Virus record (IMG/VR): IMGVR_UViG_3300036766_000194
Coordinates: 62,001-126,000 of that record
Direction: 5' to 3' (one strand)
DNA: 64,000 nucleotides
Part shown: positions 1 to 63,374 of the stretch, piece after piece
How positions within the stretch are numbered: position 1 is the first letter of the stretch
Layout of the letters: the number at the start of each line of letters is the position of its first letter
Notes under the pieces: model-generated
Databases searched by the model: none
The model's input: only the letters and a program-made list of their open reading frames with translations
What the model was told of the DNA's origin: nothing
Position numbers and translations under genes: made by a program

Positions 1-912
1 CGTAAGGAGGTAGGTGTAAATCCTCAAAACTGGTATAATTTTAAGAAAGAAAGGAAATTTGGACCAAGAATACCGCTTAGATATTTTCTAACCCATCGTC
101 GTAAATTACCAGCACCGCAAGGTTTATATTTTAGCCAAACTAGAGGCAAGGCTAGAGTGATTGGGAATCTGACTTTGCGGCTTAGTAATTGGGCCTATGT
201 TTTGGGATTCTTTTTAGGGGCTGGTTGGCTTAATAGGGATAGCCGAGGTGTTATTACGAGTGTCAGCTTTTCTGTGGATGCACCTCATTACAAAAAATTG
301 TGCACTGCCTTGGGAGCCATTAAAGAAACACCCCTGCGTATCCGAGAACGCTTCAGCACAGTTGCAATGGTTGAGATTGAGTGCGATAACAAATTCTTCG
401 CAGAAATTTTGGCTTACGTTTTCAAGGGGGCAAAGAAATGTTGGGAAAAAGAACTTCCTACAGAATGGACAACTACTTGGTCCAGGAAAGCTCGTGAACA
501 GCTATTGGAAGGACTTAGAGATTCAGACGGCGTAGCAGCTGGTTCTAATCCAACTACTAGTAGTGCCTATACAACCACTTCTCTGGCTTTAGCAAAATCA
601 ATTCTTCTCTTGCTGAGGAGTCTAGGTATATCGGGGAGTTACAGTGAACACTCTCCGAGTCTTGGGGGGTGGGTTAAGGAAAAGGACGGTTCATTACGTC
701 AGATACAAGGTAAAAGAATTTCCTACATAATTGGGTGGAGTGTTGGAACGGGTCATTGGGGTTCGGCTTTGCCCTATAAATCCCCCGAATTGTGGAATCA
801 AGCCCCAATACATAGGATTAAGGATGTCGTTCCGCCATCACATGTATACGATTTAGAAATGGAAGGTCATCCTTCTTTTTGCCTTGAAGGAATTGGTATG
901 CTAGGAAAAAAT
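1..912 (+). mobile_element. Intein with LAGLIDADG endonuclease (C-terminal part)
   Basis: LLEGLRDSDG LAGLIDADG-type motif; block F VYDLEM; ends GKN followed by +1 Ser of SATP. Confidence 0.8.
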
Positions 913-19854: not shown

Positions 19855-20133
19855 TTATTCTGTCTCTCGGTGATTAGGATAATTGGGATAGCGATTCTTC
19901 AGGGCCCAAACGTACATCCAGCCAGCAACACATCCAATAGACAGATGAGCTAGACCCATTTTCAAATAGTGTTGGAGTTCTTCTGTCTCCATAGGACCTT
20001 CATTAGTCATGATGAAGAGTAAATTTAAGAATCCAGACAGCAGGCAGAATACAGACAAACTTAGAGTAATAAATCGTTGGATTTGAAAATTGAGAACGTC
20101 AACAACGGATTTGAACCTCTTCCATCTACTCAT
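19855..20133 (-). CDS. Small membrane protein
   Basis: Two hydrophobic segments; overlaps the upstream stop. Confidence 0.55.
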   Translation of the reverse strand: MSRWKRFKSVVDVLNFQIQRFITLSLSVFCLLSGFLNLLFIMTNEGPMETEELQHYLKMGLAHLSIGCVAGWMYVWALKNRYPNYPNHRETE

Positions 20134-21151
20134 CCCAATGATTCCATTCTATGCGACTACGCATCCAATGTCCGTGCGTTTGTACGTGATCTTTTCGAAC
20201 ATACTTGCCCACTCGGGTAGAAAATTCTTTTAAGTGAAATGACCCCGCAGGCCGCACAACGTAACCTTCCCACTTGTCAGAATTGAGGGAATATTGTTCT
20301 AGTATTTCGGGTGAAAAGTCTTCCCATTTCTTTCCATACCATCTTACCGGAACGGTTTGTAGACCGAGGAGTCCCGCATAATCTACTGTATCTTTCCAAG
20401 GGAGACAAGTCAAACCGTCCCAAATACTGAATACAAGAAAGAACGAAGGCAAATTCGAATAATATATGCTATGTTTGGCGGTAAGATTTTCACCACAAAT
20501 ACGCCAATTATTAGGAATGTCATGAGCAATACTAGCATGTAATGCTTTGACACGATCTCTTGATGAGTGCGCTTCATAATCCAGAGACCGAGCATGCATA
20601 TAGTCCCTGTACATGGTGGTATTTTCACCGTCCATTTTTTCGGTGACAACTACTTCGGTACCATTCCAGGTGTCTAAGATTTCTTCAGACAATTCTCGGT
20701 CGTCTTCCTTCATTCCGGGGGACCAAGGAAAATGCCAAGTACGAGGATATTTTACACGATTAAGAAACAAATGTCGTACAGGTTCAAGAACTTTCTGCAC
20801 AGATTCATCGTCATAAAGTTCTCCCTTCAAGCGTAAGCCATTTGTTAAGACAGGGTTGCCCCACTTGTCATAGGGCTGGTCCGGATAAAGATGTGGGGGT
20901 AGAATGGTGTTTTTAATTCCAGCTACGGCGCGAATTTCATCGGTTGCTAAGTCTGTTGCTTCAGCTGCTAGATGACATTTGCCACAGAGAGTTGCTCCGT
21001 TTTCAGAGTAATATCCCCCATCAGGGAATAGTCTACGTTCCATAATATGATGAGCATCTTGCCCCGGCTGGCCGCAAACCACACATTTGTGATTATCCCT
21101 CGCGAAGACTCCTTCGCGGAACTGATCACGTGTTAGGAGGCCTAATCCCAT
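20126..21151 (-). CDS. HNH nuclease-RNA ligase fusion
   Basis: RD.HKCVVC...AHHI....NGATLC..CH (HNH); KYPRT.H.PWSPG, TEKMDGEN (motif I), GEN and EGYVVR (ligase). Confidence 0.85.
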   Translation of the reverse strand: MGLGLLTRDQFREGVFARDNHKCVVCGQPGQDAHHIMERRLFPDGGYYSENGATLCGKCHLAAEATDLATDEIRAVAGIKNTILPPHLYPDQPYDKWGNPVLTNGLRLKGELYDDESVQKVLEPVRHLFLNRVKYPRTWHFPWSPGMKEDDRELSEEILDTWNGTEVVVTEKMDGENTTMYRDYMHARSLDYEAHSSRDRVKALHASIAHDIPNNWRICGENLTAKHSIYYSNLPSFFLVFSIWDGLTCLPWKDTVDYAGLLGLQTVPVRWYGKKWEDFSPEILEQYSLNSDKWEGYVVRPAGSFHLKEFSTRVGKYVRKDHVQTHGHWMRSRIEWNHWDE

Positions 21152-32476: not shown

Positions 32477-32488
32477 AATACTGATATG
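32474..32488 (+). promoter_or_regulatory. Leaderless promoter TAGAAT-N6-ATG
   Basis: TAGAAT ACTGAT ATG. Confidence 0.6.
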
Positions 32489-33334
32489 AAAACTCTCACC
32501 CTCATGATTGGCGAAAGCGGTTCTGGAAAATCTACCATTGCCAAGACCATGCTTGATCGTTATACTCTTCGCGTCAATCGGGATAGTATTCGCAAGATGC
32601 TCTTTGAGACTTGGAACGCCCGGTACGAAAAGATTGTTGAAAAGCTCGAATTTGAGGCGGCAGGGCAGGCGTTAGACGCTGGATTCAATGTCATTGTGGA
32701 TGACCTGAATATCAATTCCAGGACTCGTCAACAGTGGGAAGAGTTTGCCAAGAAAAAGGGAGCAGAGTTCTGTAAATATGAAGTGAATGTCTCCCTTGAC
32801 GAGTGCGTTCGTCGTGATAGCCACCGTGAGGGTAGGGACCGTGTGGGTCGGTCTGTAATCACCAAGCAATTCATCCGTAACGAACGTCCTGAAGTGTTTA
32901 AAAACACCCCTACAGTTTTGGTGGATGTTGACGGTACTCTGGCAGATTGTGAAGGCGTGCGTTCCCCCTATGACGAGTCCCGCGTGGGCGAGGACAAGGT
33001 CCATTGGAACATCGCGAGGATGGTTTGCGAGGAGTCTCGTGAGAATCAAATTATCATCGTTTCTGGCCGTCACGAAGACTGTGGTCCGGACACTGAGGAC
33101 TGGTTGCTCCATAAGGCCAGAGTTCCTTTCCAGGGATTGCTCATGCGTAACCGGGGCGACTTCCTCTCCAGCGACGTCATCGTTAAGGAAAAACTCCTCG
33201 CCATGATATTGAAGTATGTGGACAAGGCGAACATCCGGTTGGTCATTGATGACAGACCCCGCGTAATTCGATTTTGGAGAAGTGTTGGTTTGACCGTTTT
33301 TGCGGCTAGGGGTGAGGATCTTGAAGATTTTTAA
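32486..33334 (+). CDS. pseT: Polynucleotide 5'-kinase/3'-phosphatase (T4 PseT-like)
   Basis: GESGSGKST, VNRDSIR, DVDGTLA (HAD), VSGR and IDDRP. Confidence 0.92.
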   Translation: MKTLTLMIGESGSGKSTIAKTMLDRYTLRVNRDSIRKMLFETWNARYEKIVEKLEFEAAGQALDAGFNVIVDDLNINSRTRQQWEEFAKKKGAEFCKYEVNVSLDECVRRDSHREGRDRVGRSVITKQFIRNERPEVFKNTPTVLVDVDGTLADCEGVRSPYDESRVGEDKVHWNIARMVCEESRENQIIIVSGRHEDCGPDTEDWLLHKARVPFQGLLMRNRGDFLSSDVIVKEKLLAMILKYVDKANIRLVIDDRPRVIRFWRSVGLTVFAARGEDLEDF

Positions 33335-33338
33335 TCAC

Positions 33339-35660
33339 GTGGTCAATGATTTCACAACGACTTATTTGCGCGACATTCTCGATATTGAAAAGCTCGAAGA
33401 ACACGTTACCAATGGTGTCATTCGTTGCCAGGATCACCCGCTCTACCCCCGTCTGACGATATTGAACTACACTGAGAAAGCTCAGTTTGATCGTATTTGG
33501 GACAGCGTAACATCTGTCTGCCGGGGCTTGATTGTTGAGACTTCCCTACAGGTTGGCCCAGTACCGAGTAATCCGTTTGACGGAGCACGGGTCATCGCCC
33601 GTGCCTTCAACAAATTCCACAACCTGAACACAGAATATGTTCCAGAGACGATGGAAGAAAATCTTATCGGTATTCCGGAAGTAACCGATAAGCTGGATGG
33701 GTGTTTTCTAGGAAATACACTTCTCAATCTGTGGGATGGCGGAACAATCACAATTCGTGAGGTAGTTAAAAATCGTCTAAAAGTCAAACTCGTGGGTGCG
33801 GATGTTGCAGGAAGACTTGTCCCCACAGAAATTGTGGACTGGTTTGACAATGGAATTAAGGACCAGTGGCTTCTTTTGACAGTGGATTGTTTACCTTCTT
33901 TGAAATCAGGCTGTAGGACGGGAAACCATATTCCTGTAACACCCAATCACAGAATTCTTTTGAATGGAAGGTACCAACCCGCAGCTTACGCAAAAGTTGG
34001 AGATCTAGTTTCAACTCAGGAACTCCGACCTGATAACGCTGTGTTGGAACTTATAAGGGCAGGCCTCCTGGGAGATGGGTCGTTGTCTAAAAACGGAACA
34101 CATTCTTACTCTTATGGGGAAAATCATAAACAAGAGCACCTAGAGTATGTAAAGGAAATCCGTCTCTGGTTGGGTGAATGTGCCATTCAGGGAAAATCCA
34201 AGGTCTCTGGGCATGGCACCATAATGGAGCAAGCCAACTCTAAAGCCTACACATGGTTAGAAAGGATACGACAACTTTGGTACCCGAATGGAACAAAAGT
34301 TGTTCCTAAGGATTTATCTTGGATGAATAATTTTTGTGTGGCAAAGTGGTACATGGACGACGGTTCTCTTCAACACGATGAAAGACAGAAAGATCGTGCT
34401 CATTTTGCTACCAATGGTTTCAAAAAGAAGGACTGTGAAAGACTAGGTGTCAAGTTGCGTGAATTATATGGTGTAGACTACAGGTTGTCAGAAGATAATC
34501 GTGGAGGTTCAACCTGGTCAGTTAGACTTAACGCCGGAAAGAATGGGGAAATTGACAAGTTTTGGAAAGCAATTGCCGCTCATATAGTACCCTGTTTGCG
34601 ATACAAACTTCCTAAAGAATACAGAAATGTAAAGTATTCAGGTCATACTCCAGGTAAAGAAATACGAGAAAAGAGAGATGTTAAAATTCTTAGGATCTCC
34701 AAACTGACAGGAGACCAGAAAACTGCCACTCACAGCTATTTCCGTTCTGGTTGTAAGGGATTTGACATTAAAACCACTACAGGCAATTATATGGTAAGGG
34801 GTGTATTGGTTCATAATTCTCTAGGTATTGTCTTTCCCTATGACAACCAATGGCACGTAGCTACACGGGGGTCTTTTGACTCTGACCAGGCGCGATGGGC
34901 AACGGCATTCTTGCGCGAGCATTTGAATGTGACGGAACTCCTTCACCCGGATGAGCCGTTTCCGAAGGGCTATACCCCGGTCTGCGAAATTATCTACGCG
35001 GCCAACCGCATTGTCGTTTCCTACGACTTTGAAGGACTCGTGCTGCTTGCCTTTGTTGGTCCTAACGACGCTTATGAGATGCCTCGCGCTATGGCGGAAC
35101 GCGCTGCCGTGTTGGTCGGACTGCCGATCGTAAAGAAATTCAAGAAGACTTTATCCGAATGTGTCAAGGAAAACATTCCCAACACAGAAGGATATGTTCT
35201 TACCTATCCGAATGGGGTGAAAGTAAAGGTGAAGTTTGAGGAGTACGTTCGCCTTCACCGTATACTCACCGGGTTGTCTCCCATTGCTGTCTGGGAGATG
35301 ATGAAGAATAGTCAGGATTCTGAAATTGACCGTCTGCTTGAAGACCCCAAGATTCCCGAAGGATTTAAGACTTGGCTGAAGAAGTGGGACGCTAAGTTGT
35401 CGGAAGATTTCAGTAAGATTGAGGATACTACCTACAAGCTACACACTCTTGTGAAGGAAGCAGGCCTCATTCGGGAGAAATATTCCCGTGAAGAACGTAA
35501 AGCATTAGCCGAATTCATCATTAGGACAGTAGAAGATATAACATACCAGAAGGGGCTTCAGTTTGCTCTCGCCGACGGTAAGTCTATCATCCAGGAAATC
35601 TGGGAGTACATTCGTCCTAACGGTAAGGCTATTGACACTTTCAAAAAGGAAGGCGAATGA
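33339..35660 (+). CDS. rnlA: RNA ligase 1 (T4 Rnl1-like) with an intein
   Basis: LNYT..AQ, CRGLI, RAFNKFHN, KLDG|SLGI, ATRGSF.SDQA, EGYV and VKVKFEEY. Confidence 0.9.
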   Translation: MVNDFTTTYLRDILDIEKLEEHVTNGVIRCQDHPLYPRLTILNYTEKAQFDRIWDSVTSVCRGLIVETSLQVGPVPSNPFDGARVIARAFNKFHNLNTEYVPETMEENLIGIPEVTDKLDGCFLGNTLLNLWDGGTITIREVVKNRLKVKLVGADVAGRLVPTEIVDWFDNGIKDQWLLLTVDCLPSLKSGCRTGNHIPVTPNHRILLNGRYQPAAYAKVGDLVSTQELRPDNAVLELIRAGLLGDGSLSKNGTHSYSYGENHKQEHLEYVKEIRLWLGECAIQGKSKVSGHGTIMEQANSKAYTWLERIRQLWYPNGTKVVPKDLSWMNNFCVAKWYMDDGSLQHDERQKDRAHFATNGFKKKDCERLGVKLRELYGVDYRLSEDNRGGSTWSVRLNAGKNGEIDKFWKAIAAHIVPCLRYKLPKEYRNVKYSGHTPGKEIREKRDVKILRISKLTGDQKTATHSYFRSGCKGFDIKTTTGNYMVRGVLVHNSLGIVFPYDNQWHVATRGSFDSDQARWATAFLREHLNVTELLHPDEPFPKGYTPVCEIIYAANRIVVSYDFEGLVLLAFVGPNDAYEMPRAMAERAAVLVGLPIVKKFKKTLSECVKENIPNTEGYVLTYPNGVKVKVKFEEYVRLHRILTGLSPIAVWEMMKNSQDSEIDRLLEDPKIPEGFKTWLKKWDAKLSEDFSKIEDTTYKLHTLVKEAGLIREKYSREERKALAEFIIRTVEDITYQKGLQFALADGKSIIQEIWEYIRPNGKAIDTFKKEGE
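33702..34817 (+). mobile_element. Class 1 intein (372 aa) with LAGLIDADG endonuclease, inserted in ligase motif I
   Basis: KLDG|CFLGNT ... GLLGDGSL ... WYMDDGS ... VLVHN|S. Confidence 0.92.
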
Positions 35661-38453: not shown

Positions 38454-41400
38454 GTGACCGACACACTACCTACTTGTCCCCTTATAACCTCCTACACTAG
38501 AGAGTTCGGACTCCCGGACGCTACTCTAGAGAAACTGTATGCGGTTCGTCAGTGGGATGTAGAACAACTCCTTCCTTTTAAATGGCCCGCTCAACTAAAG
38601 ACCCATACTCCTGAGGGGCCGTTACACTTACGAGAATATCAAAAGCAAGCCGCTCATCATTTGATAAGGATGCCTAGATTCATATTGGGAGATGCTGTAG
38701 GATTAGGAAAAGCACAACCTCTCACCGCTAAAATTCTTACTCCTACGGGATGGACTACCATGGGAGAAATTAAAGTGGGTGACGCCGTAGTCGATCCCGA
38801 CGGCGGAATCGGTTATGTAGAGGGGGTGTATCCTCAAGGAGAGAAGGAAATCTTTAGATTAAGAACCAATGACAGTTGTCAAACAGAGTGTTGTGAGGAA
38901 CATCTTTGGACTGTTCAAACAGTTGATGATAGAATAAAAGGAAAATTTCGTACTCTGACCACGAAACAGCTTTTAGAAAAAGGTCTGTTTGAAATTAACG
39001 GTCCGGAAGGTTGGCACCGTAATAGATTCTTTTTACCCTCAATAAAACCTAGCTCCTTTCAAGCAAGAAGTTCTCTTTCTATTAAATCCTACACGATGGG
39101 TGCTCTTTTAGGTGACGGTACTTTTCGACATCATATGGCTTTTTCGGTTGCTGAAAGAGAAATACTAGAACGTGTTGAGAAAGAACTTCCTTCAACATTG
39201 AATTTGAAGCATGTAGGAGATCACGATTACAATATCATCACCCCTACTAGAAAAAACAACGCATATATTAATGCTATGAGGAAATTGGGTTTGTTTGGAC
39301 ACTTTTCTTATGAGAAATTTATCCCAGAGTGCTACTTGAAATCTTCGATTTCTAACAGAATAGAACTTCTTAGAGGAATAATGGATACCGATGGTGAATG
39401 TGGGAAAAGCTATGGGGCTTATTTTTCTTCTACCTCATTTCACCTTGCTAACGATGTAGCAGATTTGGTCCGTTCCCTTGGAGGAATAGCTAAAATTAAG
39501 TATGGAGGGAAAGGAAAGTACAAAAAGAAAGATGGCACAATTAAAATCTGTCGAGGTAGTTGGAATGTCAGCATCAAGACGTCGTTTGTTCCTTTTCACT
39601 TAACTAGGAAGGTACAAATTTGGAAACCTCCGATATTTGCTAGGGCAATTCTAGATATTTCTTCTGTGGGTGTCAAGTCTGCTCAGTGTATTCGTGTTTC
39701 AACCAAACGAAACCTATACATTACAGATGATTATATACCCACGCATAATACTCTAGACTGTATCGCTGCTGCCGCATATCTTAAAGGACGTTTTCCTAAC
39801 ATCAAAATCATTGTATTAGCAACAAAGTCCACTACGTTGCAGTGGGCTAGTGAGTTTGAACGTTTCTCTACATTACGACCTTATGTTATGCAGGACACAT
39901 TTGGTAAAAAGTCTTCTTACCCCGCACGATTTGATCAGCTTCATACATTCTTCCACTCAAAAAAGATAGATGTAATGATTTGTAAATACTCTTCTATGAT
40001 TGGTAAGAGGAAGAAAATAGAAGGTCGATTTGATTCTGAAGGTAATCCAGTAAAACAGGGTCGAGAACGTATTGCTAGTGAAGTGAGAGAATTCTGTAAG
40101 ATCATTAAACCTTACAAAGAAAACGTCATTCTTATACTTGACGAGTGTCAGAAGTTCAAAGCTCAACCGTTGACTTCAAAAGTGCTAACTCCTGAAGGTT
40201 GGAAATTTATGGGAGAACTACAATTAGGAGATAAGGTAGTCGATCCTGATGGTGGATGGGGTAAAGTCAGTGAACTTCACCCAATACACGAAGCCGAAGT
40301 TTTTCAGTTGACCACCGATGACGGATGTAAAGCACAAGCTGCAGATAAACACCTTTGGTTGGTGACAGACGAGAATAACAGACAGAGGAATACAGATCGT
40401 ATCCTCACCACTCAAAACTTAATCACTGAGATAGTTCGTCGTAAGATTTTAAAAAGACCTCTATCTATCCCGGTAACAAAACCTGTAAACTTTACACCTA
40501 AGCGAAAAAGACTCCCCATTTCTCCCTATGTTTTGGGTGTTCTATTGGGAGATGGAAGCATTGCCTACGATGGTGTGGGCTTTACGAATGAAGATTTAGA
40601 GATAGTGGAACATTGTAAGACCCTTCTTCCAGCCTCTTTGAAGATTATTCAAGATAACTATGATCTCATTTTTTGGCGGGTAGTTCAGAAAAAAGTACAT
40701 TTTGGAAAAACATTAGTGCGTTGGGCAGGAAGAAAAGATGGGAGTAAAAAACCTTCCTGGAGAACTCACGAATACGCTTATTGGTTGCGCCGTTTTGGGT
40801 TAAGAGGTAAAAGAGCGCATGAAAAGTACATCCCTCTAGATTATTTGCGAGCAAGTATCCCCCAACGCATCGAATTATTGCGAGGATTACTTGATACAGA
40901 CGGGAGTATTTCTGACACGGGACAGATTATTCTCAACACCACATCTAAGGCTCTAGCTGAAAATACACTAGAATTAGTGCGCTCACTTGGTGGGGTGGCA
41001 AGAATCCACGGACCTTACGAGGGAAGTTACACTAAAAATGAAAGAAAAATAACAACTCGAAATTTCTGGAGAATAAGTCTCTTCACTCCTATAAACCCGT
41101 TCCGTTTATCTAGAAAAGCAGAAAAATGGGAGAAGCAGAGAAAGTTAAAACGTAGCAGTCAAATGTCAGCTCGAGCTAAGAGAATAGTAACCATCGATAC
41201 CTTGGGAAGAAATTTAGTACGGTGCATCACTGTGACCACAAAACGAGGATTGTATATTACAGATGACTATCTAGTTACACACAACAGTGTCGGGGGGAGT
41301 CATCGTTATCTAGTACAGGCATTACAAAAACAATGTGGATGGGTCTGGGCATTAACCGCTACGGTGATCAAGAATGATCTTAGCGAATTTTATAGTATTG

Positions 41401-42563
41401 CCTCCGCCATAGGCATTCGTCCTTTCGGTTACATGAGAGATTTTGAGGAAGAATTCTGTATATTTTATGACCAGTACATTGGTGGTGGTAGAAGCATCAA
41501 AACTCTAAAAGGATACCAGAACGTTGCCAAGTTTAAGGCGGGTATAAGACCCTTCTTTTATGGAAGGTCTCAGGCTCAAGTTAAAGAACCCTTACCTAAA
41601 CTCACCACCATTTACCACCGAGTGGACTTAAATGACGAACAAGCTAAATTACTTCTAACAGATATTCCCCAAGGAAAGTTTGTCCTTCCTCCCACGTTTG
41701 TTGAACATAATGGGGAGATGTATCTGCGTGAACGAGACGTCAACAATAATATGACGATGTTGTCCGTATATCAACTTGTTGCTAATCATCCGGGTCTATT
41801 AGACAGATCAAACATAAAAGATTTTTACAGTAAAAAGCTGTCTCCCAAAGAAGAGTGTCTGTTAGATATGTTAGATGGAGACTACCGGGGAGAGAAGATT
41901 ATTGTCTATACAAAGTATCGTTCTTGGATTGATCGTCTAGAAAAGATCACCAAGGATGGACATTTCACCGACCGTAAATTCCTACGCATAACCGGGAATG
42001 AAAATGAACAGGAACGGCACGAAGCTAAACTTAAATTTCAAGATCCTAATTCCGGGTACGATCTAATTGTTATCAATGCCGCAGGTATGGAAGGAATTAA
42101 TCTACAACAAGCCGCCCATATGATTTTATTGGATGCTCCGTGGTCTTGGGGAGACCTTATACAGTTGGTAGGAAGAATGATCCGCATGGCTTCTCCTCAC
42201 TCGGCTTGTACTCTTCACGTTCTTACCGCAAAGGGTACTATTGACGAGTACACCATTGAAACTCTAAAGGGTAAGAAAGGTGTTTTTGAATCAATCCTAG
42301 GAGAGTCTCATTCTGCGGGTATCTTAGATGATGGATTGGGGTATGACATAGCTAGCGGTATGGAAGCGGTGGGGACCGAAGAAGAATTCAAATCCATGTT
42401 AACGGCGCATATAAAATCGGTAGGCATGTCGGATTTCCTAGAAGGAGAACTTCTTATTCAGGCGCGGGAAGACGACCAATACAAGATGGTATTTGAAAAG
42501 GGTGGACGAAAGAGAAAGGAGAAAGTCAGTGACAAAGATCTTCTCGACAGATGGGGCATATAG
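38454..42563 (+). CDS. SNF2-family helicase with two inteins
   Basis: LREYQ, GDAVGLGK|T (Walker A), ILDECQKFK|S, LTAT.IKN.L.EFY, NAAGMEGINLQ and QLVGR..R. Confidence 0.92.
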   Translation: MTDTLPTCPLITSYTREFGLPDATLEKLYAVRQWDVEQLLPFKWPAQLKTHTPEGPLHLREYQKQAAHHLIRMPRFILGDAVGLGKAQPLTAKILTPTGWTTMGEIKVGDAVVDPDGGIGYVEGVYPQGEKEIFRLRTNDSCQTECCEEHLWTVQTVDDRIKGKFRTLTTKQLLEKGLFEINGPEGWHRNRFFLPSIKPSSFQARSSLSIKSYTMGALLGDGTFRHHMAFSVAEREILERVEKELPSTLNLKHVGDHDYNIITPTRKNNAYINAMRKLGLFGHFSYEKFIPECYLKSSISNRIELLRGIMDTDGECGKSYGAYFSSTSFHLANDVADLVRSLGGIAKIKYGGKGKYKKKDGTIKICRGSWNVSIKTSFVPFHLTRKVQIWKPPIFARAILDISSVGVKSAQCIRVSTKRNLYITDDYIPTHNTLDCIAAAAYLKGRFPNIKIIVLATKSTTLQWASEFERFSTLRPYVMQDTFGKKSSYPARFDQLHTFFHSKKIDVMICKYSSMIGKRKKIEGRFDSEGNPVKQGRERIASEVREFCKIIKPYKENVILILDECQKFKAQPLTSKVLTPEGWKFMGELQLGDKVVDPDGGWGKVSELHPIHEAEVFQLTTDDGCKAQAADKHLWLVTDENNRQRNTDRILTTQNLITEIVRRKILKRPLSIPVTKPVNFTPKRKRLPISPYVLGVLLGDGSIAYDGVGFTNEDLEIVEHCKTLLPASLKIIQDNYDLIFWRVVQKKVHFGKTLVRWAGRKDGSKKPSWRTHEYAYWLRRFGLRGKRAHEKYIPLDYLRASIPQRIELLRGLLDTDGSISDTGQIILNTTSKALAENTLELVRSLGGVARIHGPYEGSYTKNERKITTRNFWRISLFTPINPFRLSRKAEKWEKQRKLKRSSQMSARAKRIVTIDTLGRNLVRCITVTTKRGLYITDDYLVTHNSVGGSHRYLVQALQKQCGWVWALTATVIKNDLSEFYSIASAIGIRPFGYMRDFEEEFCIFYDQYIGGGRSIKTLKGYQNVAKFKAGIRPFFYGRSQAQVKEPLPKLTTIYHRVDLNDEQAKLLLTDIPQGKFVLPPTFVEHNGEMYLRERDVNNNMTMLSVYQLVANHPGLLDRSNIKDFYSKKLSPKEECLLDMLDGDYRGEKIIVYTKYRSWIDRLEKITKDGHFTDRKFLRITGNENEQERHEAKLKFQDPNSGYDLIVINAAGMEGINLQQAAHMILLDAPWSWGDLIQLVGRMIRMASPHSACTLHVLTAKGTIDEYTIETLKGKKGVFESILGESHSAGILDDGLGYDIASGMEAVGTEEEFKSMLTAHIKSVGMSDFLEGELLIQAREDDQYKMVFEKGGRKRKEKVSDKDLLDRWGI
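38712..39749 (+). mobile_element. Ala1 class 3 intein (346 aa) in Walker A, with LAGLIDADG endonuclease
   Basis: GK|AQPLTAK ... EEHLW ... LLRGIMDTDG ... AQCIRV ... YITDDYIPTHN|T. Confidence 0.9.
40161..41285 (+). mobile_element. Ala1 class 3 intein (375 aa) just after Walker B, with LAGLIDADG endonuclease
   Basis: FK|AQPLTSK ... DKHLW ... LLRGLLDTDG ... VRCITV ... YITDDYLVTHN|S. Confidence 0.9.
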
Positions 42564-48419: not shown

Positions 48420-48884
48420 ATGATCGGCATCAAAAGATACGTCGTCGGGTTCATGTTCGATTATACCCTCAATAAAGTTGTGCTCATACGCAAAGATCGT
48501 CCTGAGTGGCAAAAAGGTAAACTTAATGGTGTAGGAGGAAAGGTAGAAGAAAATGAATCCCCCTATGATGCTATGCCTAGAGAATTTAGGGAAGAAACTG
48601 GGATCGAAACCTCTGGATGGAAACTTTTCTCTATTCTCTGTTTTGGTGATATTGGCATTCCTGGTTCTCTTAGTGAAGTCTACTGTTACTGGATACTTGG
48701 AGATGTGAGTAAACCCAGATCCGTAACAAGTGAACAAATTGTGGTCATAAACGTAGAATCTTTAACTTCTCGTGAGGATGCTATCCCCAATATTCGTTGG
48801 CTTGTTCAGATGGCTCGTAGTATGAGCCTAGGAGAGACCGCTACCTATTTTGATATCTATGAGCGTAAAGTATGGCAAAACTAG
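48420..48884 (+). CDS. Nudix hydrolase
   Basis: GGKVEENESPYDAMPREFREETG Nudix box. Confidence 0.9.
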   Translation: MIGIKRYVVGFMFDYTLNKVVLIRKDRPEWQKGKLNGVGGKVEENESPYDAMPREFREETGIETSGWKLFSILCFGDIGIPGSLSEVYCYWILGDVSKPRSVTSEQIVVINVESLTSREDAIPNIRWLVQMARSMSLGETATYFDIYERKVWQN

Positions 48885-49001: not shown

Positions 49002-49382
49002 ATGTGGGATTGGCATCAGATAGGAGAGAACGACATGGTATACGTCCACGAGTTAGTCCCGTCTCCCGGAAGCTCTAAAGAAAAACAAGCCAAAAAAGTA
49101 TTCCGAGCGGGGAAGAAATTCTCCCATATGATAGCAGACACAGAAGAAGAACTAGTTGCTTTTGCTACTAAGATGGGTATGAAAGAAATATGGATTCAAG
49201 ATGCTGGAACCTACCGTTCTCATTTTGACATTACAGAGTCCCGTTTTAAGAAAATCGTAAAACAATCGGGAGTCAAATTAGTGAAGATTCGTGAATTTGG
49301 GGTAATACTTAAAGAGCGTCAAAATGCCCAACGAAAAAGCGATCTTCCAAGACATATACACCCGCCTCAAAACCCAGGGTAG
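49002..49382 (+). CDS. DUF4031-like protein
   Basis: SHMIADT.EEL..FA..MG...W.Q......HFDI. Confidence 0.65.
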   Translation: MWDWHQIGENDMVYVHELVPSPGSSKEKQAKKVFRAGKKFSHMIADTEEELVAFATKMGMKEIWIQDAGTYRSHFDITESRFKKIVKQSGVKLVKIREFGVILKERQNAQRKSDLPRHIHPPQNPG

Positions 49383-50148
49383 ATTCTGTTCTCCCCGAGG
49401 ATTAAAGATTATTGAATGTGAGAATTTTTCGTACGAACTCCCTCCTAGAGTCTGTATCTCTAACTTTGCTGACCGTAAATTATCCATCCCTTATCTAAAG
49501 ACAGAGTTCCTATGGTATTTGAAGGGAGATCTATATGATCTTTCTATTGCCAAGCATGCGGCTATTTGGCGTGGTATAGTTGTAGATGGCAAACTCAATT
49601 CTAACTACGGGCACTATATCTTCCGCAATGAACAGGGACTCGCCTGGGTGATTGATGAACTTCGCAGAGATAGAGATAGCCGCCGCGCTTACATTATGAT
49701 ATTGGGAAATCAACATCTTAATCCTAATGAGAAAGATGTACCCTGTACGATGTCGTTAGGTTTTCGCATTCGGGATAACAAGCTCAATATGAGCGTGAGA
49801 ATGCGTAGTCAAGATGCTATTTATGGTATGGGCAACGACGCCCCAGCTTTTTCTTTCATTCATCAAATGGTTTGGGCCTGTGTAAAATGGTACTATAAAG
49901 AGCTAGAAATGGGTAGTTACCACCATGTAGCAGACAGTTTTCATGTCTATGAACGTCACTTCGATATGCTAGAAAAGATCACAACTCCTGCTGCGGAGTT
50001 CAGCCTGATTGAAGTCCCTCCTATCGCAGATAACTATGAAGTGAATTATTTGCTTAGTATTTCCTCTGGAAAGCCAGTAGATTACATTCGTAACAAAGAC
50101 TATTTTGAGTTTACAAAATGGCTAACTTCAGACTTGCCGCAGGATTAA
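49324..50148 (+). CDS. Thymidylate-synthase-fold enzyme, dCMP hydroxymethylase type
   Basis: DSRRA, PCT (catalytic Cys), MRSQDAIYGMGND (Asp at the ThyA Asn177 position, as in T4 gp42 RSNDVVFGFRND) and SFHVYERHF. Confidence 0.8.
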   Translation: MPNEKAIFQDIYTRLKTQGRFCSPRGLKIIECENFSYELPPRVCISNFADRKLSIPYLKTEFLWYLKGDLYDLSIAKHAAIWRGIVVDGKLNSNYGHYIFRNEQGLAWVIDELRRDRDSRRAYIMILGNQHLNPNEKDVPCTMSLGFRIRDNKLNMSVRMRSQDAIYGMGNDAPAFSFIHQMVWACVKWYYKELEMGSYHHVADSFHVYERHFDMLEKITTPAAEFSLIEVPPIADNYEVNYLLSISSGKPVDYIRNKDYFEFTKWLTSDLPQD

Positions 50149-51368: not shown

Positions 51369-51887
51369 GTGCTACAGATACATGTTATTTATGTCATTAT
51401 TGCTGCTATACTTATTATTGTATTCCGTGGGATGAGAAAAGAACATCTTAGGATCCGCAATATAGAAAAGAATGAAGATACCCGATTCAAACAAGCCTTA
51501 GACAAAGTTTCAGAACTGAAAGAAAACGATTTCCGTCGCTTACAGGACTGGGTTGGTGATTGGTCTGATCGCGTCTTAAAACCCAAAGGAGTGACTATCC
51601 AGGGCACGTACAAGCATCTTCAAAAGGAAATGGTTGAATTAGGTAAGGAACTAGATATCTGGCTTTCTCCAGCCTTTCAAGTTAAACCCGATATGAGCTA
51701 TTTAGAGGTTCGTGAAAAGATGGCTAAAGAAATAGCCGACATTGTCATTGTGTGTTGTCACCTTTCTCATCAATTAAATATTCCTCTTTCTTCCCATATC
51801 TTAGAAAAGATGGAAATAAATGAAAAACGCCAATGGGCAGAGGCTAATGCGGAGGGTGTGTCGCAGCATATTTCAGAAAATGTCTAA
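51369..51887 (+). CDS. MazG-like dNTP pyrophosphohydrolase with N-terminal TM helix
   Basis: KHLQKEMVEL...EIADIVI......EKMEIN.KRQW. Confidence 0.75.
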   Translation: MLQIHVIYVIIAAILIIVFRGMRKEHLRIRNIEKNEDTRFKQALDKVSELKENDFRRLQDWVGDWSDRVLKPKGVTIQGTYKHLQKEMVELGKELDIWLSPAFQVKPDMSYLEVREKMAKEIADIVIVCCHLSHQLNIPLSSHILEKMEINEKRQWAEANAEGVSQHISENV

Positions 51888-53319: not shown

Positions 53320-53331
53320 AATAGCTACATG
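53317..53331 (+). promoter_or_regulatory. Leaderless promoter TAGAAT-N6-ATG
   Basis: TAGAAT AGCTAC ATG; the TAG doubles as the upstream stop codon. Confidence 0.6.
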
Positions 53332-54567
53332 GAAAACCTAGTAGCCAACATGGTTGTGAGGGTTCTGTCCCTTAACGGGTACGAAGCCTACTTGGTGGGT
53401 GGGTGTGTTCGTGACAAGATAATGGGTCATAAACCCAAGGATTACGACGTTACCACCAATGCCACACCCGCTCAGGTTATGGAACTTTTCTCCGAAACGA
53501 TCCCCGTAGGAGCTAGTTTTGGTGTAGTTCGTGTTCGAATTGATGGCGTTGAGATTGAAGTTGCTACTTACCGTGCCGATGGTGACTACAGTGATGGTCG
53601 TCGTCCGGACACTGTAGAATTTTCCAAGACCGTTAATGAAGACGTTGTTCGTCGTGACTTCACCCTCAATGGTCTTCTGCAAGATTCCAAGGGAGATGTA
53701 ATTGACCTTGTCGGGGGTCTGCAAGACATTCATAACAAGTATATCAGTGCTATTGGAGATCCTATTAAGAGATTTGAAGAGGATTCTTTGCGTATGCTTC
53801 GCGCTATTAGATTTGCAGCGCGTTTCGATTTTAAAATTGAATTCAATACCTTAGCAGCCCTTATCTCTAAGGCATCTACTATCAAGCGTGTTAGCCAGGA
53901 ACGCATCACTAACGAACTTCTTCAAATGCTTAGTGGTCCTCGTCCCAGTATTGCGATAAAACTCCTGGAGGAAACCACCCTGTTGGCTGAAATCTTTCCC
54001 AAGTATCATTCAATGGATATCGTTTTGAATAAATTTAGGGGTACGCGAACGAAGAATCCTATGGTGGCTCTAGTTCTGTTCTTGAGTGAACTGTCAGAGA
54101 AGGAATTTGTCAACGTTCTTAACCAACTGAAATTGAGTAACGAACAGAAGCAGGTTGCTACTCTGGCCTACTCTTACAAACATAAGATGCGGGAATTTAT
54201 CACCGCTGACTTGGCTACCCTCAAGCGTTTCAAGCGTTTGGTGGGGGCTAAAGAAGCTATGACCGTCTTCATTATTGAGTCTTCTTATGGAGTTGACCAG
54301 TTTCCTCAGGCTGGAGAGATTATTTTCCGACTGGATAACTGTGAAACTTCCTATAAGCCGCTCATCACAGGGAACGACCTGATTGCTGCGGGTTACAAAC
54401 CTGGTCCGTTGTTCTCTACGGTATTAAATGTCGTAGAGACCGCGCAGCTTAATGAAGACATCACCACCCAAGAGCAGGCTCTGAGTCTAGCTAAGATGGC
54501 TATGAGTATGGGGTCTGAAAACGTGGAGGTGTTTGTTATGTCGCGCCCCGGCGGGCGCGTGGATTGA
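53329..54567 (+). CDS. cca: CCA-adding tRNA nucleotidyltransferase / poly(A) polymerase family
   Basis: YLVGGCVRD...KDYDVTT, EVATYR, DVVRRDFTLN, EDSLRMLRAIRF and VSQERI..E. Confidence 0.9.
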   Translation: MENLVANMVVRVLSLNGYEAYLVGGCVRDKIMGHKPKDYDVTTNATPAQVMELFSETIPVGASFGVVRVRIDGVEIEVATYRADGDYSDGRRPDTVEFSKTVNEDVVRRDFTLNGLLQDSKGDVIDLVGGLQDIHNKYISAIGDPIKRFEEDSLRMLRAIRFAARFDFKIEFNTLAALISKASTIKRVSQERITNELLQMLSGPRPSIAIKLLEETTLLAEIFPKYHSMDIVLNKFRGTRTKNPMVALVLFLSELSEKEFVNVLNQLKLSNEQKQVATLAYSYKHKMREFITADLATLKRFKRLVGAKEAMTVFIIESSYGVDQFPQAGEIIFRLDNCETSYKPLITGNDLIAAGYKPGPLFSTVLNVVETAQLNEDITTQEQALSLAKMAMSMGSENVEVFVMSRPGGRVD

Positions 54568-62693: not shown

Positions 62694-63374
62694 GTGAAGA
62701 CTCTTATTCATATTCTCGGACCTGGTGCATCAGGTAAGTCTACGCTATCCCGAGCTATTCTTCAATATGGAAATCCTGTTCCTTATGTAGCAGAAGCATC
62801 CGATGTTGTTCCTTGTACAAACAAAGGAGTGATTGGGACTGAGAAGATTTCCTACGTCTGGTCTAGTAATGGAATAGCACTTGCCGGGAATTCTAAGAGT
62901 GGTACGGACAGTATCAATGCCATTGATGCTCTTCCTAACGTCTTAGAACTTTGCTGGGCTAAAGTCCCCGCTGTTATTGTTGATCCAGTACGTTGCAGTA
63001 AGAAATTTGTAGATTGGATGAAAACCTATCCAGAGCCGCTTACCGCATTATTTGTGTACTTGGACCTTTCCCTGGAAGAAAATGTTCGTCGGTTGATAAA
63101 TCGTCGTTTTGAAAACAACATGAGGAGAAGTAAGGGACTCGCTATTCCTGAAACTTCTCTCCCTGAGAAAACCTATAGCAATATGTTGGCTTTTCGAGAA
63201 CGTGCTCAAGGAGTCTTCACACACGCCGGCAATACCTATAACCGCTTCCCTAAACTGTGTTTAGCACTCCCTGAGAGACTGTCTACAGGGGAAGGGGCTG
63301 CGGCGGTGCATAGTGCCCTAAAATATTTAGAAGGGCTTAAAGAGGCTAAGAATGACCTAATCGTGAACACATGA
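62694..63374 (+). CDS. P-loop nucleotide kinase-like protein
   Basis: ILGPGASGKST; RL..RR lid motif. Confidence 0.7.
   Translation: MKTLIHILGPGASGKSTLSRAILQYGNPVPYVAEASDVVPCTNKGVIGTEKISYVWSSNGIALAGNSKSGTDSINAIDALPNVLELCWAKVPAVIVDPVRCSKKFVDWMKTYPEPLTALFVYLDLSLEENVRRLINRRFENNMRRSKGLAIPETSLPEKTYSNMLAFRERAQGVFTHAGNTYNRFPKLCLALPERLSTGEGAAAVHSALKYLEGLKEAKNDLIVNT

What the first reader, a model, noticed from the sequence alone, without database searches (positions are those of the whole stretch)
49324..50148. dCMP-hydroxymethylase-type enzyme implies a modified-cytosine genome
Seen: MRSQDAIYGMGND places Asp where ThyA has Asn177, the specificity switch of T4 gp42 (RSNDVVFGFRND); SFHVYERHF is also gp42-like. 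Known: T4 makes 5hmC and glucosylates it, blocking restriction and CRISPR. Inference: the GT-B gene (4523-5602), the MazG-like enzyme (51369-51887, possible dCTPase) and the P-loop kinase (62694-63374) may form a dispersed hmC/glycosyl-hmC pathway.
Basis: partly seen in the sequence, partly recalled or inferred. Interest (0 to 1): 0.6.

Follow-up and report, generated by a model that had tools for sequence, protein, structure and literature searches.

The report
Cytosine-type hydroxymethylase in hypermodifying jumbo phage
The gene really encodes a thymidylate-synthase-family enzyme with the full signature of a dCMP hydroxymethylase, but in this 300-kb sediment phage it is partnered with the kinase, amino-acid transferase and PLP-enzyme toolkit known from thymidine hypermodification, not with a T4-like sugar pathway, so the DNA is probably hypermodified and which base is modified stays open.

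Summary
Window 49324-50148 (+) encodes a 274-aa thymidylate-synthase-fold protein. It is the only TS-family gene in a complete 299,875-bp jumbo phage from sediment, which has no ThyX. It carries every residue that defines T4 dCMP hydroxymethylase, and all are invariant in 119 homologues. It lacks the marks of ThyA, dUMP hydroxymethylases, 5-hydroxy-dCMP synthases and CMP hydroxymethylases.

The proposed T4-like pathway does not.
- The GT-B protein has the fold, but its relatives mostly sit in phages without a TS homologue.
- The P-loop "kinase" belongs to a family encoded next to TET/JBP, AADT and PLP genes.
- The genome also encodes an amino-acid:DNA transferase and a PLP enzyme homologous to Salmonella phage ViI gp247 and gp226.
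- In a related jumbo phage, PLP enzyme, AADT and kinase form one operon.

All other AADT phages examined use an Asn-type dUMP hydroxymethylase or a TET enzyme, so a cytosine-type enzyme here is unusual.

All eight 6-bp palindromes without A/T are nearly absent (O/E 0.07). Thymidine-hypermodifying phages show this; cytosine-modified ones do not. I favour hm-dCMP, deamination, 5hmU and an amino-acid adduct. Cytosine hypermodification is the novel alternative.

The parts
49324..50148 (+). Pyrimidine hydroxymethylase of the dCMP type (TS fold; P0001, 274 aa). Key residues: Glu61, Trp82, Ser93-Asn94-Tyr95, Arg120-Arg121, Asp138, Cys141, Thr142, Ser162, Asp164, Asp172, His207, Tyr209.
   Evidence: Pfam PF00303. 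Best solved relatives by sequence are MilA at 2e-15 and T4 dCH at 4e-14. Signature alignment; invariance. AF2 model pLDDT 94.8; top Foldseek hits MilA and T4 dCH. Only TS-family gene in the genome, and no ThyX.
51432..51887 (+). MazG-like all-alpha NTP pyrophosphohydrolase (the ORF is open from GTG 51369). Candidate enzyme for editing the dNTP pool; specificity unknown.
   Evidence: PF12643 at 1.8e-6 and PF04447 at 1.2e-5. Best solved relative is MazZ 7ody at E 0.003, with DCTPP1 at 0.84. A 37%-identical homologue lies directly beside the TS homologue in viral record G024. PRA-PH or dUTPase_2 enzymes flank the TS gene in 17 + 6 other loci.
62694..63374 (+). P-loop kinase of a family encoded with TET/JBP, AADT and PLP genes. 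Inferred 5-hydroxymethyl-pyrimidine DNA kinase, analogous to 5-HMUDK.
   Evidence: Only weak AAA_18 by Pfam. ESM Atlas look-alikes carry HMUDK_HMUD1 or Ploopntkinase3, score 0.96. Homologues of 40-59% identity lie immediately downstream of Tet_JBP genes, and one is followed by ADDT and PALP. A 43%-identical homologue lies in an ADDT/PALP cluster. In the related phage G026 it follows PLP and AADT in one overlapping operon.
48420..48884 (+). NUDIX hydrolase 440 bp upstream of the hydroxymethylase. Possible nucleotide-pool enzyme; role not shown.
   Evidence: PF00293 at 1.6e-9. The same gene order (NUDIX, DUF4031, TS) is seen in the 76%-identical relative L020.
49002..49382 (+). DUF4031 protein overlapping the start of the hydroxymethylase gene by 59 nt; function unknown.
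   Evidence: PF13223 at 1.4e-14. Adjacent to the TS homologue also in L020 and L093, but not generally.

Best explanation
P0001 is a folate-dependent deoxycytidylate 5-hydroxymethylase and the phage's only source of a 5-hydroxymethyl-pyrimidine. It is the first, pre-replicative step of a dispersed DNA-hypermodification pathway. The later steps are a base-directed DNA kinase (window 62694-63374), an amino-acid:DNA transferase (AADT, genome 294770-295945) and a PLP-dependent enzyme (genome 295926-296837). These are the enzyme kinds that turn 5-hydroxymethyl-dU in DNA into aminoethoxymethyl-type bases in Salmonella phage ViI. The route I think most likely: dCMP is hydroxymethylated by P0001; hm-dCMP is deaminated to hm-dUMP by the phage dCMP deaminase (genome 28969-29871); hm-dUMP is phosphorylated (candidate AAA_28 kinase, genome 293657-294271) and incorporated in place of thymidine; the hydroxymethyl group in DNA is then phosphorylated, displaced by an amino acid and decarboxylated. 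Shown here: the fold, the residue signature, the presence and homology of each gene, the operon in a relative, and the palindrome statistics. Inferred: every catalytic activity, the deamination step and the identity of the final base. My confidence in the enzyme type is about 0.8. That it feeds a kinase/AADT/PLP pathway rather than glucosylation: about 0.7. That the end product sits at thymine positions: about 0.5. The figure given below is for the whole chain.
For: Enzyme type. P0001 has Asp138 (T4 Asp145 / ThyA Leu143), Ser93-x-Tyr95, Asp164 (ThyA Asp169), Asp172 (ThyA Asn177), Thr142 (ThyA His147), Ser162 and Arg120. The rules come from PMC13326640, PMC6400193, PMC5175136 and PMC8670742. 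Sequence and structure searches rank MilA and T4 dCH first.

Sole source. One TS-family gene, no ThyX, no TET/JBP.

Later steps. ADDT PF18724 at E 1.4e-16, above the cut-off. The AADT is 60% identical and the PLP enzyme 45% identical to the ADDT and PALP genes of locus L206. They match ViI orf00247 (gp247, 2e-22) and orf00226 (gp226, 1e-49), whose roles were shown in PMC8989533. The PLP-AADT-kinase operon is seen in G026, which shares 130 of 337 genes.

Thymine rather than cytosine. Relatives of the AADT at 50% identity or more sit in phages that use TET (12 of 22) or Asn-type dUMP hydroxymethylases (5 of 22, all five Asn). Palindromes without A/T have O/E 0.07 here (8 of 8 below 0.25; Fisher p 3e-6 against the other palindromes) and 0.14 in G026. 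That matches ViI 0.18, SPO1 0.19, G050 0.00, G058 0.28 and G066 0.31. Phages with the same D-type enzyme but no AADT show 0.83-0.92, and 5mC phage Xp12 shows 0.96. A dCMP deaminase is present in both this genome and G026.
Against: No phage is known to reach hm-dUMP by deaminating hm-dCMP. All characterised thymidine hypermodifiers use an Asn-type dUMP hydroxymethylase or a TET enzyme directly. The Asp/Thr signature is invariant, so nothing in P0001 hints at use of uracil. If hm-dCMP is made, some hm-dCTP would be expected to enter the DNA as well. Palindrome avoidance is indirect: it can be inherited from an ancestor, depends on the hosts' restriction enzymes, and two AADT phages (phiW-14 0.75, G064 0.88) do not show it. 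The window kinase gives no Pfam hit to HMUDK_HMUD1 or Ploopntkinase3 even at E 10. The pathway genes are up to 180 kb apart in this genome. No DNA chemistry was measured.
Confidence: 0.4

Rival explanations
1. Cytosine hypermodification. hm-dCTP made through P0001 replaces dCTP, and the kinase, AADT and PLP enzyme act on 5hmC in DNA, giving an amino-acid-derived 5-substituted cytosine. That base class has not been described.
For: P0001 has the complete cytosine-type signature, and it is invariant. It is the only hydroxymethylase in both this genome and G026. This needs no extra step. A MazG-like enzyme that could act as dCTPase lies 1.3 kb away. MetaGPA links Asp177/non-His147 TS homologues to modified cytosine in environmental phages (PMC8670742).
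Against: Kinase and AADT relatives at 40-60% identity all sit in systems whose hydroxymethyl source is TET or an Asn-type dUMP hydroxymethylase. All eight palindromes made only of G and C are almost absent (O/E 0.07), which is hard to reconcile with protected cytosines. Three phages with the same enzyme family but no AADT show no such avoidance.
Confidence: 0.27
2. T4-like replacement of C by 5hmC, then glycosylation by the GT-B enzyme at 4523-5602 or by the glycan cluster, with the P-loop protein as hm-dCMP kinase and the MazG-like enzyme as dCTPase.
For: In other members of this enzyme family the gene lies beside a T4 beta-glucosyltransferase-like gene (L025), beside sugar-nucleotide genes (L024) or beside GT2-TPR genes (9 loci). 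The window protein 4523-5602 has a GT-B fold, TM 0.7-0.95 to glycosyltransferase clusters. A cluster of UDP-glucose dehydrogenase, epimerases, GT2, GT6 and GT11 lies at genome 46-58 kb.
Against: No sequence homologue of T4 alpha-gt, beta-gt, gp1 or gp56. GT-B relatives occur mostly in records without any TS homologue: 16 of 20, and 4 of the 6 that are at least 90% complete. The P-loop protein's kin travel with TET, AADT and PLP genes, not with nucleotide kinase contexts. Strong avoidance of C-containing palindromes.
Confidence: 0.1
3. P0001 works as a dUMP hydroxymethylase despite its Asp, or accepts both dUMP and dCMP, and supplies hm-dUMP directly to a standard thymidine-hypermodification pathway.
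For: It would explain the thymidine-type toolkit and the palindrome pattern without a deamination step.
Against: The residue at ThyA position 177 is the established switch: T4 D179N and ThyA N177D exchange specificity (cited in PMC13326640, PMC8670742, PMC6400193). All verified dUMP hydroxymethylases aligned here, and all five from AADT phages, have Asn177, Asn147 and a one-residue insertion, which P0001 lacks.
Confidence: 0.1
4. An ordinary thymidylate synthase that makes dTMP.
For: Automatic annotation calls homologues 'thymidylate synthase'. The genome has no other ThyA or ThyX.
Against: Asn177 is Asp, Leu143 is Asp, His147 is Thr and Trp83 is Ile. All NCBIfam ThyA equivalogs score far below their cut-offs, 33-50 bits against 108-405. 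The relative RsoM2USA carries a separate true Td as well as this enzyme (PMC8504454).
Confidence: 0.02

Closest known systems
Bacteriophage T4 gp42, deoxycytidylate 5-hydroxymethylase (PDB 1B5E, 6A9A)
   Same: TS fold and all catalytic and specificity residues: Glu60, Ser94-x-Tyr96, Arg123/124, Asp145, Cys148, Ser169, Asp171, Asp179, His216, Tyr218. In the quick tree T4 gp42 falls inside this family.
   Different: Only 24-25% identity, and about 30 extra C-terminal residues. Here there is no adjacent beta-glucosyltransferase and no gp1, gp56 or alpha-gt homologue. The genome context is kinase/AADT/PLP instead.
Thymidine hypermodification pathway of Salmonella phage ViI, Pseudomonas phage M6 and relatives (5-HMUDK, AADT/aGPT-Pplase, PLP decarboxylase; PMC5889632, PMC8989533)
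   Same: The AADT and PLP enzyme are homologues of ViI gp247 and gp226. A P-loop kinase lies in the same operon in relative G026. The same depletion of all-G/C palindromes is seen as in ViI.
   Different: Known systems start from an Asn-type dUMP hydroxymethylase or a TET/JBP T-dioxygenase. This phage and G026 have only an Asp-type (cytosine) hydroxymethylase. The genes are scattered over the genome here. The window kinase does not hit the HMUDK Pfam model.
Environmental TS homologues linked to modified cytosine (MetaGPA, PMC8670742), including the 5hmC carbamoyltransferase systems; Xanthomonas phage Xp15; Ralstonia jumbo phage RsoM2USA ORF10
   Same: Same sequence family: 51% identity to RsoM2USA ORF10 and 40% to Xp15. 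Asp177 and non-His147. Typical partners are dCMP deaminase (33 of 55 loci), PRA-PH/MazG-type pyrophosphatase and a P-loop kinase.
   Different: Here the partners are not adjacent, no carbamoyltransferase is present, and an AADT module is present that 36 of 37 other such records lack.
RB69 gp48 / DLP3 gp80 5-hydroxy-dCMP synthases (flavin- and O2-dependent TS homologues, PMC13326640)
   Same: TS fold, Asp at position 177, acidic residue at position 143.
   Different: Their diagnostic Asp169-to-Asn change is absent: P0001 keeps Asp164, as do all 119 homologues. Trp80 is kept here and lost in RB69 gp48.
MilA, CMP 5-hydroxymethylase of mildiomycin biosynthesis (PDB 5JNH)
   Same: Best sequence and structure match (E 2e-15; Foldseek TM 0.76). 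Cytosine-type Asp.
   Different: MilA's ribose-selecting Ala176 and Lys133 are Ser162 and Arg120 here, the deoxyribose-type pair.

Membership tests
dCMP hydroxymethylase (T4 gp42 type) | Thymidylate-synthase fold with catalytic Cys and Glu | tested here: met
   PF00303 at E 7e-17. AF2 pLDDT 94.8, Foldseek prob 1.0 to 1B49/6A9A. Cys141 and Glu61 align with Cys148 and Glu60.
dCMP hydroxymethylase (T4 gp42 type) | Asp at the position of ThyA Asn177 (T4 Asp179): cytosine recognition | tested here: met
   Asp172; invariant in 119 of 119 homologues.
dCMP hydroxymethylase (T4 gp42 type) | Asp/Glu three residues before the catalytic Cys (T4 Asp145), plus Ser-x-Tyr (Ser94/Tyr96), the proposed hydroxymethylation signature (PMC6400193) | tested here: met
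   Asp138 and Ser93-Asn94-Tyr95, all invariant.
dCMP hydroxymethylase (T4 gp42 type) | Deoxyribose-type Ser and Arg (T4 Ser169, Arg123) rather than MilA Ala176, Lys133 | tested here: met
   Ser162 and Arg120; rule from PMC5175136.
dCMP hydroxymethylase (T4 gp42 type) | Converts dCMP and methylene-THF to 5-hm-dCMP | not testable with these tools
   Needs an enzyme assay or in vivo expression with LC-MS.
Thymidylate synthase ThyA | Asn177, Leu143, His147, Trp83; score above the equivalog cut-off | tested here: not met
   These positions are Asp, Asp, Thr and Ile. NCBIfam ThyA models score 33-50 bits against cut-offs of 108-405.
5-hydroxy-dCMP synthase (RB69 gp48 type) | Asn at the position of ThyA Asp169 | tested here: not met
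   Asp164, invariant in the family. RB69 gp48 shows Asn in the same column.
dUMP hydroxymethylase (SPO1 gp29 / ViI type) | Asn177 with a one-residue insertion before it, and Asn at position 147 | tested here: not met
   P0001 has Asp, no insertion, and Thr. SPO1, ViI, phiW-14, Montesquieu and five AADT-phage enzymes all have the Asn pattern.
T4-type glucosyl-hmC system | alpha- or beta-glucosyltransferase, gp1 dNMP kinase and gp56 dCTPase homologues | tested here: not met
   phmmer of the T4 proteins against all ORFs of the genome gave no hit at E 1 or below. Remote analogues cannot be excluded.
Amino-acid:DNA transferase (AADT, aGPT-Pplase clade 2; PF18724) | Pfam match above cut-off and homology to a characterised member | tested here: met
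   58.1 bits against a cut-off of 26.2. E 2e-22 to ViI orf00247. 60% identity to the L206 ADDT. A plain hmmscan of the same ORF listed no family; I cannot explain that discrepancy.
5-hydroxymethyl-base DNA kinase (5-HMUDK) | P-loop kinase encoded with AADT and PLP genes | tested here: met
   Operon PALP-AADT-kinase in G026. Homologues lie next to Tet_JBP, ADDT and PALP.
5-hydroxymethyl-base DNA kinase (5-HMUDK) | Match to Pfam HMUDK_HMUD1 (PF18748) or sequence homology to a characterised 5-HMUDK | tested here: not met
   No such hit even at E 10. No phmmer hit in ViI or phiW-14. Only ESM-feature look-alikes at 0.96. I therefore file it as 'works like', not as a proven member.

The most novel reading that the evidence does not exclude
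This phage and its relative G026 make an amino-acid-derived hypermodified cytosine. 5hmC, installed through a dCMP hydroxymethylase, would be phosphorylated in DNA and substituted by an AADT. That would be the first use of the kinase/AADT chemistry on cytosine and a new class of DNA base.
Probability: 0.25. Interest if true: 0.85.

Novelty: new variant of a known kind. Interest (0 to 1): 0.62.

Why it matters
Phage base modifications decide which restriction, CRISPR and type IV defences work against a phage, and they supply enzymes for DNA chemistry. Two rules have held so far. Asp-type TS homologues lead to modified cytosines that are glycosylated or carbamoylated. The kinase/AADT/PLP route belongs to thymidine and starts from an Asn-type dUMP hydroxymethylase or a T-dioxygenase. 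This genome and one related jumbo phage break that pairing. Either the AADT chemistry also works on 5hmC, giving a new base, or hm-dUMP can be reached through hm-dCMP deamination, giving a new route. The second case would also caution against reading 'Asp177' as 'modified cytosine genome' in metagenomic surveys. Both readings can be tested with a handful of recombinant proteins. The palindrome profile, taken by the A/T content of the sites, may also serve as a cheap sequence-only hint of which base a phage protects.

Tried and rejected
1. T4 alpha-gt, beta-gt, gp1 and gp56, six RB69 neighbourhood genes (gp45-47, gp50, gp52, gp53) and the Xp15 carbamoyltransferase were searched against all genome ORFs with phmmer. 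Only the Xp15 deaminase query hit.
2. Z-genome reading of the MazG-like gene (its best solved relative is MazZ): no PurZ/adenylosuccinate synthetase in the genome, so rejected.
3. Protection by methylation: no C5 or N4/N6 methyltransferase.
4. GT-B linkage: its relatives are mostly in TS-less records, so rejected as a pathway partner on present evidence.
5. Co-occurrence tests for the window kinase, the AAA_28 kinase and the MazG-like protein across 19 jumbo-phage records gave one hit each. The proteins are too divergent for the test to say anything.
6. HMMs built from the TS-adjacent PRA-PH, dUTPase_2, kinase B, GT2-TPR, carbamoyltransferase and methyltransferase clusters found nothing in this genome.
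7. Single-sequence pattern scans of viral contigs failed for P0001, the kinase and the AADT. The alignment-based scans of P0001 and the AADT worked.
8. Phylogeny: only the quick tree finished. Deep branches are weak (support 21) and T4 gp42 sits on a very long branch, so I use the tree only as consistent, not as proof.
9. A DNA polymerase fused to UDG, a mark of some T-modified phages: the PolA here has no UDG domain, which is uninformative.
10. Sequencing runs: four sediment metagenomes hold the stretch, but only as contigs. No reads were laid, since contigs cannot show base modification.
11. The records behind L203, L204 and L206 could not be searched for TS genes.

The 1.84-billion-protein profile search and complex prediction were not used. 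Only table 11 was used.
Full report
WHAT IS THERE

The window is bases 62001-126000 of a 299,875-bp IMG/VR virus record with direct terminal repeats, rated 100% complete. The same stretch is held by sediment metagenomes of four studies, as contigs only.

ORF 49324-50148 (+) gives a 274-aa protein, P0001, that contains the quoted motifs. It matches Pfam Thymidylat_synt at E 7.4e-17. It scores far below the cut-offs of all NCBIfam ThyA equivalogs. It is the only TS-family gene in the genome, and there is no ThyX. The public gene call is truncated to 209 aa and would lack the catalytic Glu61. Homologues align from residue 3, and a purine-rich stretch precedes the ATG at 49324.

WHICH KIND OF TS-FAMILY ENZYME

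By sequence, the nearest solved proteins are MilA (CMP hydroxymethylase, 2e-15) and T4 dCMP hydroxymethylase (4e-14). E. coli ThyA scores near 3e-6. An AlphaFold model built on 50 homologues has pLDDT 94.8 and pTM 0.92. Foldseek ranks MilA and T4 dCH first.

I aligned P0001 with enzymes of verified product, taken from public records:
- T4 gp42 (5hm-dCMP)
- RB69 gp48 (5-hydroxy-dCMP)
- E. coli ThyA
- Xp12 (5-methyl-dCMP)
- SPO1 gp29, ViI and phiW-14 (5hm-dUMP)

The published rules and the residues found are as follows.

| Position (E. coli ThyA numbering) | Rule | Source | P0001 |
|---|---|---|---|
| 177 | Asn for uracil, Asp for cytosine | PMC13326640, PMC8670742 | Asp172 |
| 143 | Leu in methylases, Asp/Glu in hydroxymethylases | PMC13326640, PMC6400193 | Asp138 |
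| T4 Ser94-x-Tyr96 | part of the hydroxymethylation signature | PMC6400193 | Ser93-Asn94-Tyr95 |
| 169 | Asp to Asn marks flavin-dependent 5-hydroxy-dCMP synthases | PMC13326640 | Asp164 |
| 167 and 126 | Ser and Arg mark deoxyribose substrates; MilA has Ala and Lys | PMC5175136 | Ser162, Arg120 |
| 147 | His in ThyA; a non-His residue goes with modified cytosine | PMC8670742 | Thr142 |

P0001 also has Ile where ThyA has Trp83. This is the T4 pattern at every diagnostic position. All of these residues are invariant in 119 homologues of 48-76% identity.

A quick ML tree puts T4 gp42 inside this family. RB69 gp48, ThyA with Xp12, and the dUMP hydroxymethylases fall outside. The deep branch is weak and T4 sits on a long branch. 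I conclude that the enzyme is of the dCMP-hydroxymethylase type. The activity itself is inferred.

THE FAMILY AND ITS USUAL COMPANY

The closest cultured relative is ORF10 of Ralstonia jumbo phage RsoM2USA (51% identity). That phage also has a true Td. The family occurs in jumbo phages and in 40-60-kb phages.

I clustered the genes of 55 loci. The recurrent neighbours are:
- a dCMP deaminase in 33 loci, within 2.5 kb in 27
- a PRA-PH type all-alpha NTP pyrophosphatase in 17 loci, always adjacent, or a dUTPase_2 in 6
- P-loop AAA_28-like kinases in 20 and 10 loci
- variable decorators: carbamoyltransferase (9), GT2-TPR (9), methyltransferase (7), and in one locus each a T4 beta-glucosyltransferase-like gene and sugar-nucleotide genes

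This is the logic of the T4 pathway (pool editing, hydroxymethylation, deamination, phosphorylation). It agrees with the MetaGPA link to modified cytosine and with the 5hmC carbamoyltransferase (PMC8670742).

No homologue of T4 alpha-gt, beta-gt, gp1 or gp56 exists here.

The protein at 4523-5602 is a GT-B glycosyltransferase by ESM Atlas features and structure. Of 20 viral records that hold a relative of it, only 4 have any TS-family gene. Two records that are 90-95% complete have none. I see no link to the hydroxymethylase. The genome has many other glycosyltransferases, including a cluster of UDP-glucose dehydrogenase, two epimerases, C- and FkbM-methyltransferases, GT2, GT6 and GT11 at genome 46-58 kb.

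The MazG-like protein (51432-51887) is a plausible pool-editing enzyme. Its best solved relative is MazZ, but there is no PurZ. A homologue lies right beside the TS gene in record G024.

WHAT THE 'KINASE' LED TO

The P-loop protein at 62694-63374 has only weak generic Pfam hits. Its ESM Atlas look-alikes carry the 5-hmdU DNA kinase and P-loop nucleotide kinase 3 domains. The gene neighbourhoods of its homologues were more telling:
- Proteins 40-59% identical lie immediately downstream of TET/JBP dioxygenase genes on four independent contigs.
- One of these is followed by an ADDT gene and a PLP-enzyme gene.
- A 43%-identical one lies in a phage cluster with ADDT/aGPT-Pplase and a PLP enzyme.

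P-loop kinases, AADTs and PLP enzymes are the known thymidine-hypermodification machinery (PMC8989533, PMC13229309).

Searching the whole genome then gave an ADDT-family gene at 294770-295945 (58 bits, above the cut-off). Beside it are a PLP enzyme (295926-296837) and an AAA_28 kinase (293657-294271) that matches the kinases usually adjacent to this TS family.

The AADT is 60% identical and the PLP enzyme 45% identical to those of the L206 cluster. They are homologous to ViI orf00247 (gp247, 2e-22) and orf00226 (gp226, 1e-49). Those are the serine:DNA transferase and decarboxylase that make 5-aminoethoxymethyl-dU (PMC8989533).

In G026, a 265-kb relative sharing 130 of 337 genes, PLP enzyme, AADT and the window-type kinase form one overlapping operon at 182143-185166. 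So the window kinase belongs to this module. It was separated from it in this genome.

WHY THE COMBINATION IS ODD

I took 22 viral records holding an AADT at least 50% identical to this one.
- 12 have a TET/JBP gene, 5 have a TS homologue, and none has both.
- All seven records that are at least 90% complete have one or the other.
- All five TS homologues are Asn-type dUMP hydroxymethylases, as is that of Glutamicibacter phage Montesquieu.

Conversely, of 27 records holding the Asp-type enzyme that I searched, only G026 has the AADT. This genome and G026 have a single, Asp-type hydroxymethylase and no TET.

Two readings follow. Either the kinase/AADT chemistry acts on 5hmC, or hm-dCMP is turned into hm-dUMP. 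Both genomes encode a dCMP deaminase.

AN INDEPENDENT LOOK AT THE DNA

Phages whose bases are protected lose the need to avoid restriction sites. I computed observed/expected counts (maximal-order Markov) for 6-bp palindromes. Sixteen of 64 have O/E below 0.25, against 4 of 4032 non-palindromic hexamers.

Sorting the palindromes by content is more telling. The eight made only of G and C have a pooled O/E of 0.07, and all eight are below 0.25. Palindromes with 2, 4 and 6 A/T letters give 0.69, 0.82 and 0.91 (Fisher p 3e-6).

Pooled O/E of the all-G/C palindromes in each genome:

| Group | Genome | O/E |
|---|---|---|
| This lineage | own genome | 0.07 |
| This lineage | G026 | 0.14 |
| Thymidine-modifying or AADT phages | ViI | 0.18 |
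| Thymidine-modifying or AADT phages | SPO1 | 0.19 |
| Thymidine-modifying or AADT phages | G050 | 0.00 |
| Thymidine-modifying or AADT phages | G058 | 0.28 |
| Thymidine-modifying or AADT phages | G066 | 0.31 |
| Thymidine-modifying or AADT phages (exceptions) | phiW-14 | 0.75 |
| Thymidine-modifying or AADT phages (exceptions) | G064 | 0.88 |
| Asp-type enzyme, no AADT | RsoM2USA | 0.83 |
| Asp-type enzyme, no AADT | G022 | 0.89 |
| Asp-type enzyme, no AADT | G025 | 0.92 |
| 5mC phage | Xp12 | 0.96 |
| glc-hmC phage | T4 | 0.45 (no single word strongly avoided) |
| No TS homologue | G001, G002 | 0.33-0.34, with the 2-A/T class also low (0.51-0.54) |

Sites that contain no T are thus under the strongest selection here. 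That fits protection at thymine and does not fit protected cytosine. The evidence is indirect and could be historical.

VERDICT

The inference of a T4-like glucosyl-hmC genome is not supported.

The best reading is that P0001 starts a kinase/AADT/PLP hypermodification pathway. I lean towards a thymidine-position product reached by deaminating hm-dCMP (whole chain 0.4). Hypermodified cytosine is the main and more novel rival (0.25-0.27).

The enzyme itself is a new member of a known, widespread family. Its pairing with the AADT toolkit is a new variant that a few recombinant assays could settle.

Noticed in passing
window 49324-50148 (public call starts near 49519): The public gene call for the hydroxymethylase is truncated to 209 aa. 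It starts at residue 66 and so lacks the catalytic Glu61. Homologues support the 274-aa form, which overlaps the upstream DUF4031 gene by 59 nt.
   Followed up: yes
whole genome (G000), all 6-bp palindromes: All eight palindromes made only of G and C are nearly absent: 14 sites in all against about 200 expected. T-containing palindromes are much less depleted. The same profile appears in ViI, SPO1, G026, G050, G058 and G066. It does not appear in T4, Xp12, RsoM2USA, G022 or G025. It may be a sequence-only hint of which base a phage protects.
   Followed up: partly
G000 genome 46208-57401 (outside the window, - strand): A glycan-synthesis cluster: NAD-dependent epimerase/dehydratases (two), UDP-glucose dehydrogenase, sugar C-methyltransferase, FkbM methyltransferase, GT2, GT6 and GT11. 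The target (DNA, virion or host surface) is unknown.
   Followed up: partly
window 9051-15773 (+): A 2240-aa polyvalent protein with 2'-5' RNA ligase-like, SprT-like, GNAT and ART-PolyVal domains. Proteins of this kind are thought to be injected with phage DNA as counter-defence.
   Followed up: no
window 7976-9100 (+): A 374-aa protein combining a RelA/SpoT-type nucleotide pyrophosphokinase domain with an inorganic pyrophosphatase (InPase) domain. It may make or control an alarmone.
   Followed up: no
window 20126-21151 (-), 32486-35660 (+), 53329-54567 (+): An RNA-repair set: an HNH-RNA ligase, polynucleotide kinase-phosphatase, a T4 Rnl1-like RNA ligase interrupted by a LAGLIDADG endonuclease domain, and a CCA-adding enzyme. 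Such a set is commonly read as a countermeasure against tRNA-cleaving defences.
   Followed up: no
window 1-1917 and 38454-42563 (+): Two SNF2/helicase genes carry LAGLIDADG or intein-like insertions. A DUF4379 zinc-finger protein with an REase-like domain (1841-3148) lies next to the first. Mobile endonuclease elements are frequent in this genome.
   Followed up: no
G000 genome 28969-29871 (+): The dCMP deaminase ORF reads as a 300-aa fusion: an Endonuclease VII domain (residues 74-149) in front of the deaminase domain (157-267). The G026 counterpart is a plain frame of about 159 aa. This is either a homing-endonuclease fusion or a true two-domain protein.
   Followed up: partly
loci L233-L312 and their records G050-G071: Among phages with this AADT subfamily, a TS-family hydroxymethylase and a TET/JBP dioxygenase are mutually exclusive (5 against 12 of 22 records, never both). 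Every record at least 90% complete has exactly one of them.
   Followed up: yes
L208 (Mycobacterium phage Zemanar 1-2826): In cluster-B mycobacteriophages a 41%-identical AADT homologue (gp3) sits at the genome end, next to a ParB-like gene and a gene annotated as queuine tRNA-ribosyltransferase. This hints at an uncharacterised DNA modification module there.
   Followed up: no
L316 (record G057): One Asn-type dUMP hydroxymethylase carries an insertion of about 330 residues just before the specificity Asn. Its ends look intein-like.
   Followed up: no
L070:14770-15945 (-): The AADT ORF was found by the six-frame Pfam search (PF18724, 58 bits). A direct hmmscan of the same ORF returned no family. 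BLASTP to the L206 ADDT (3e-168) confirms the family. The discrepancy between the tools is unexplained.
   Followed up: partly
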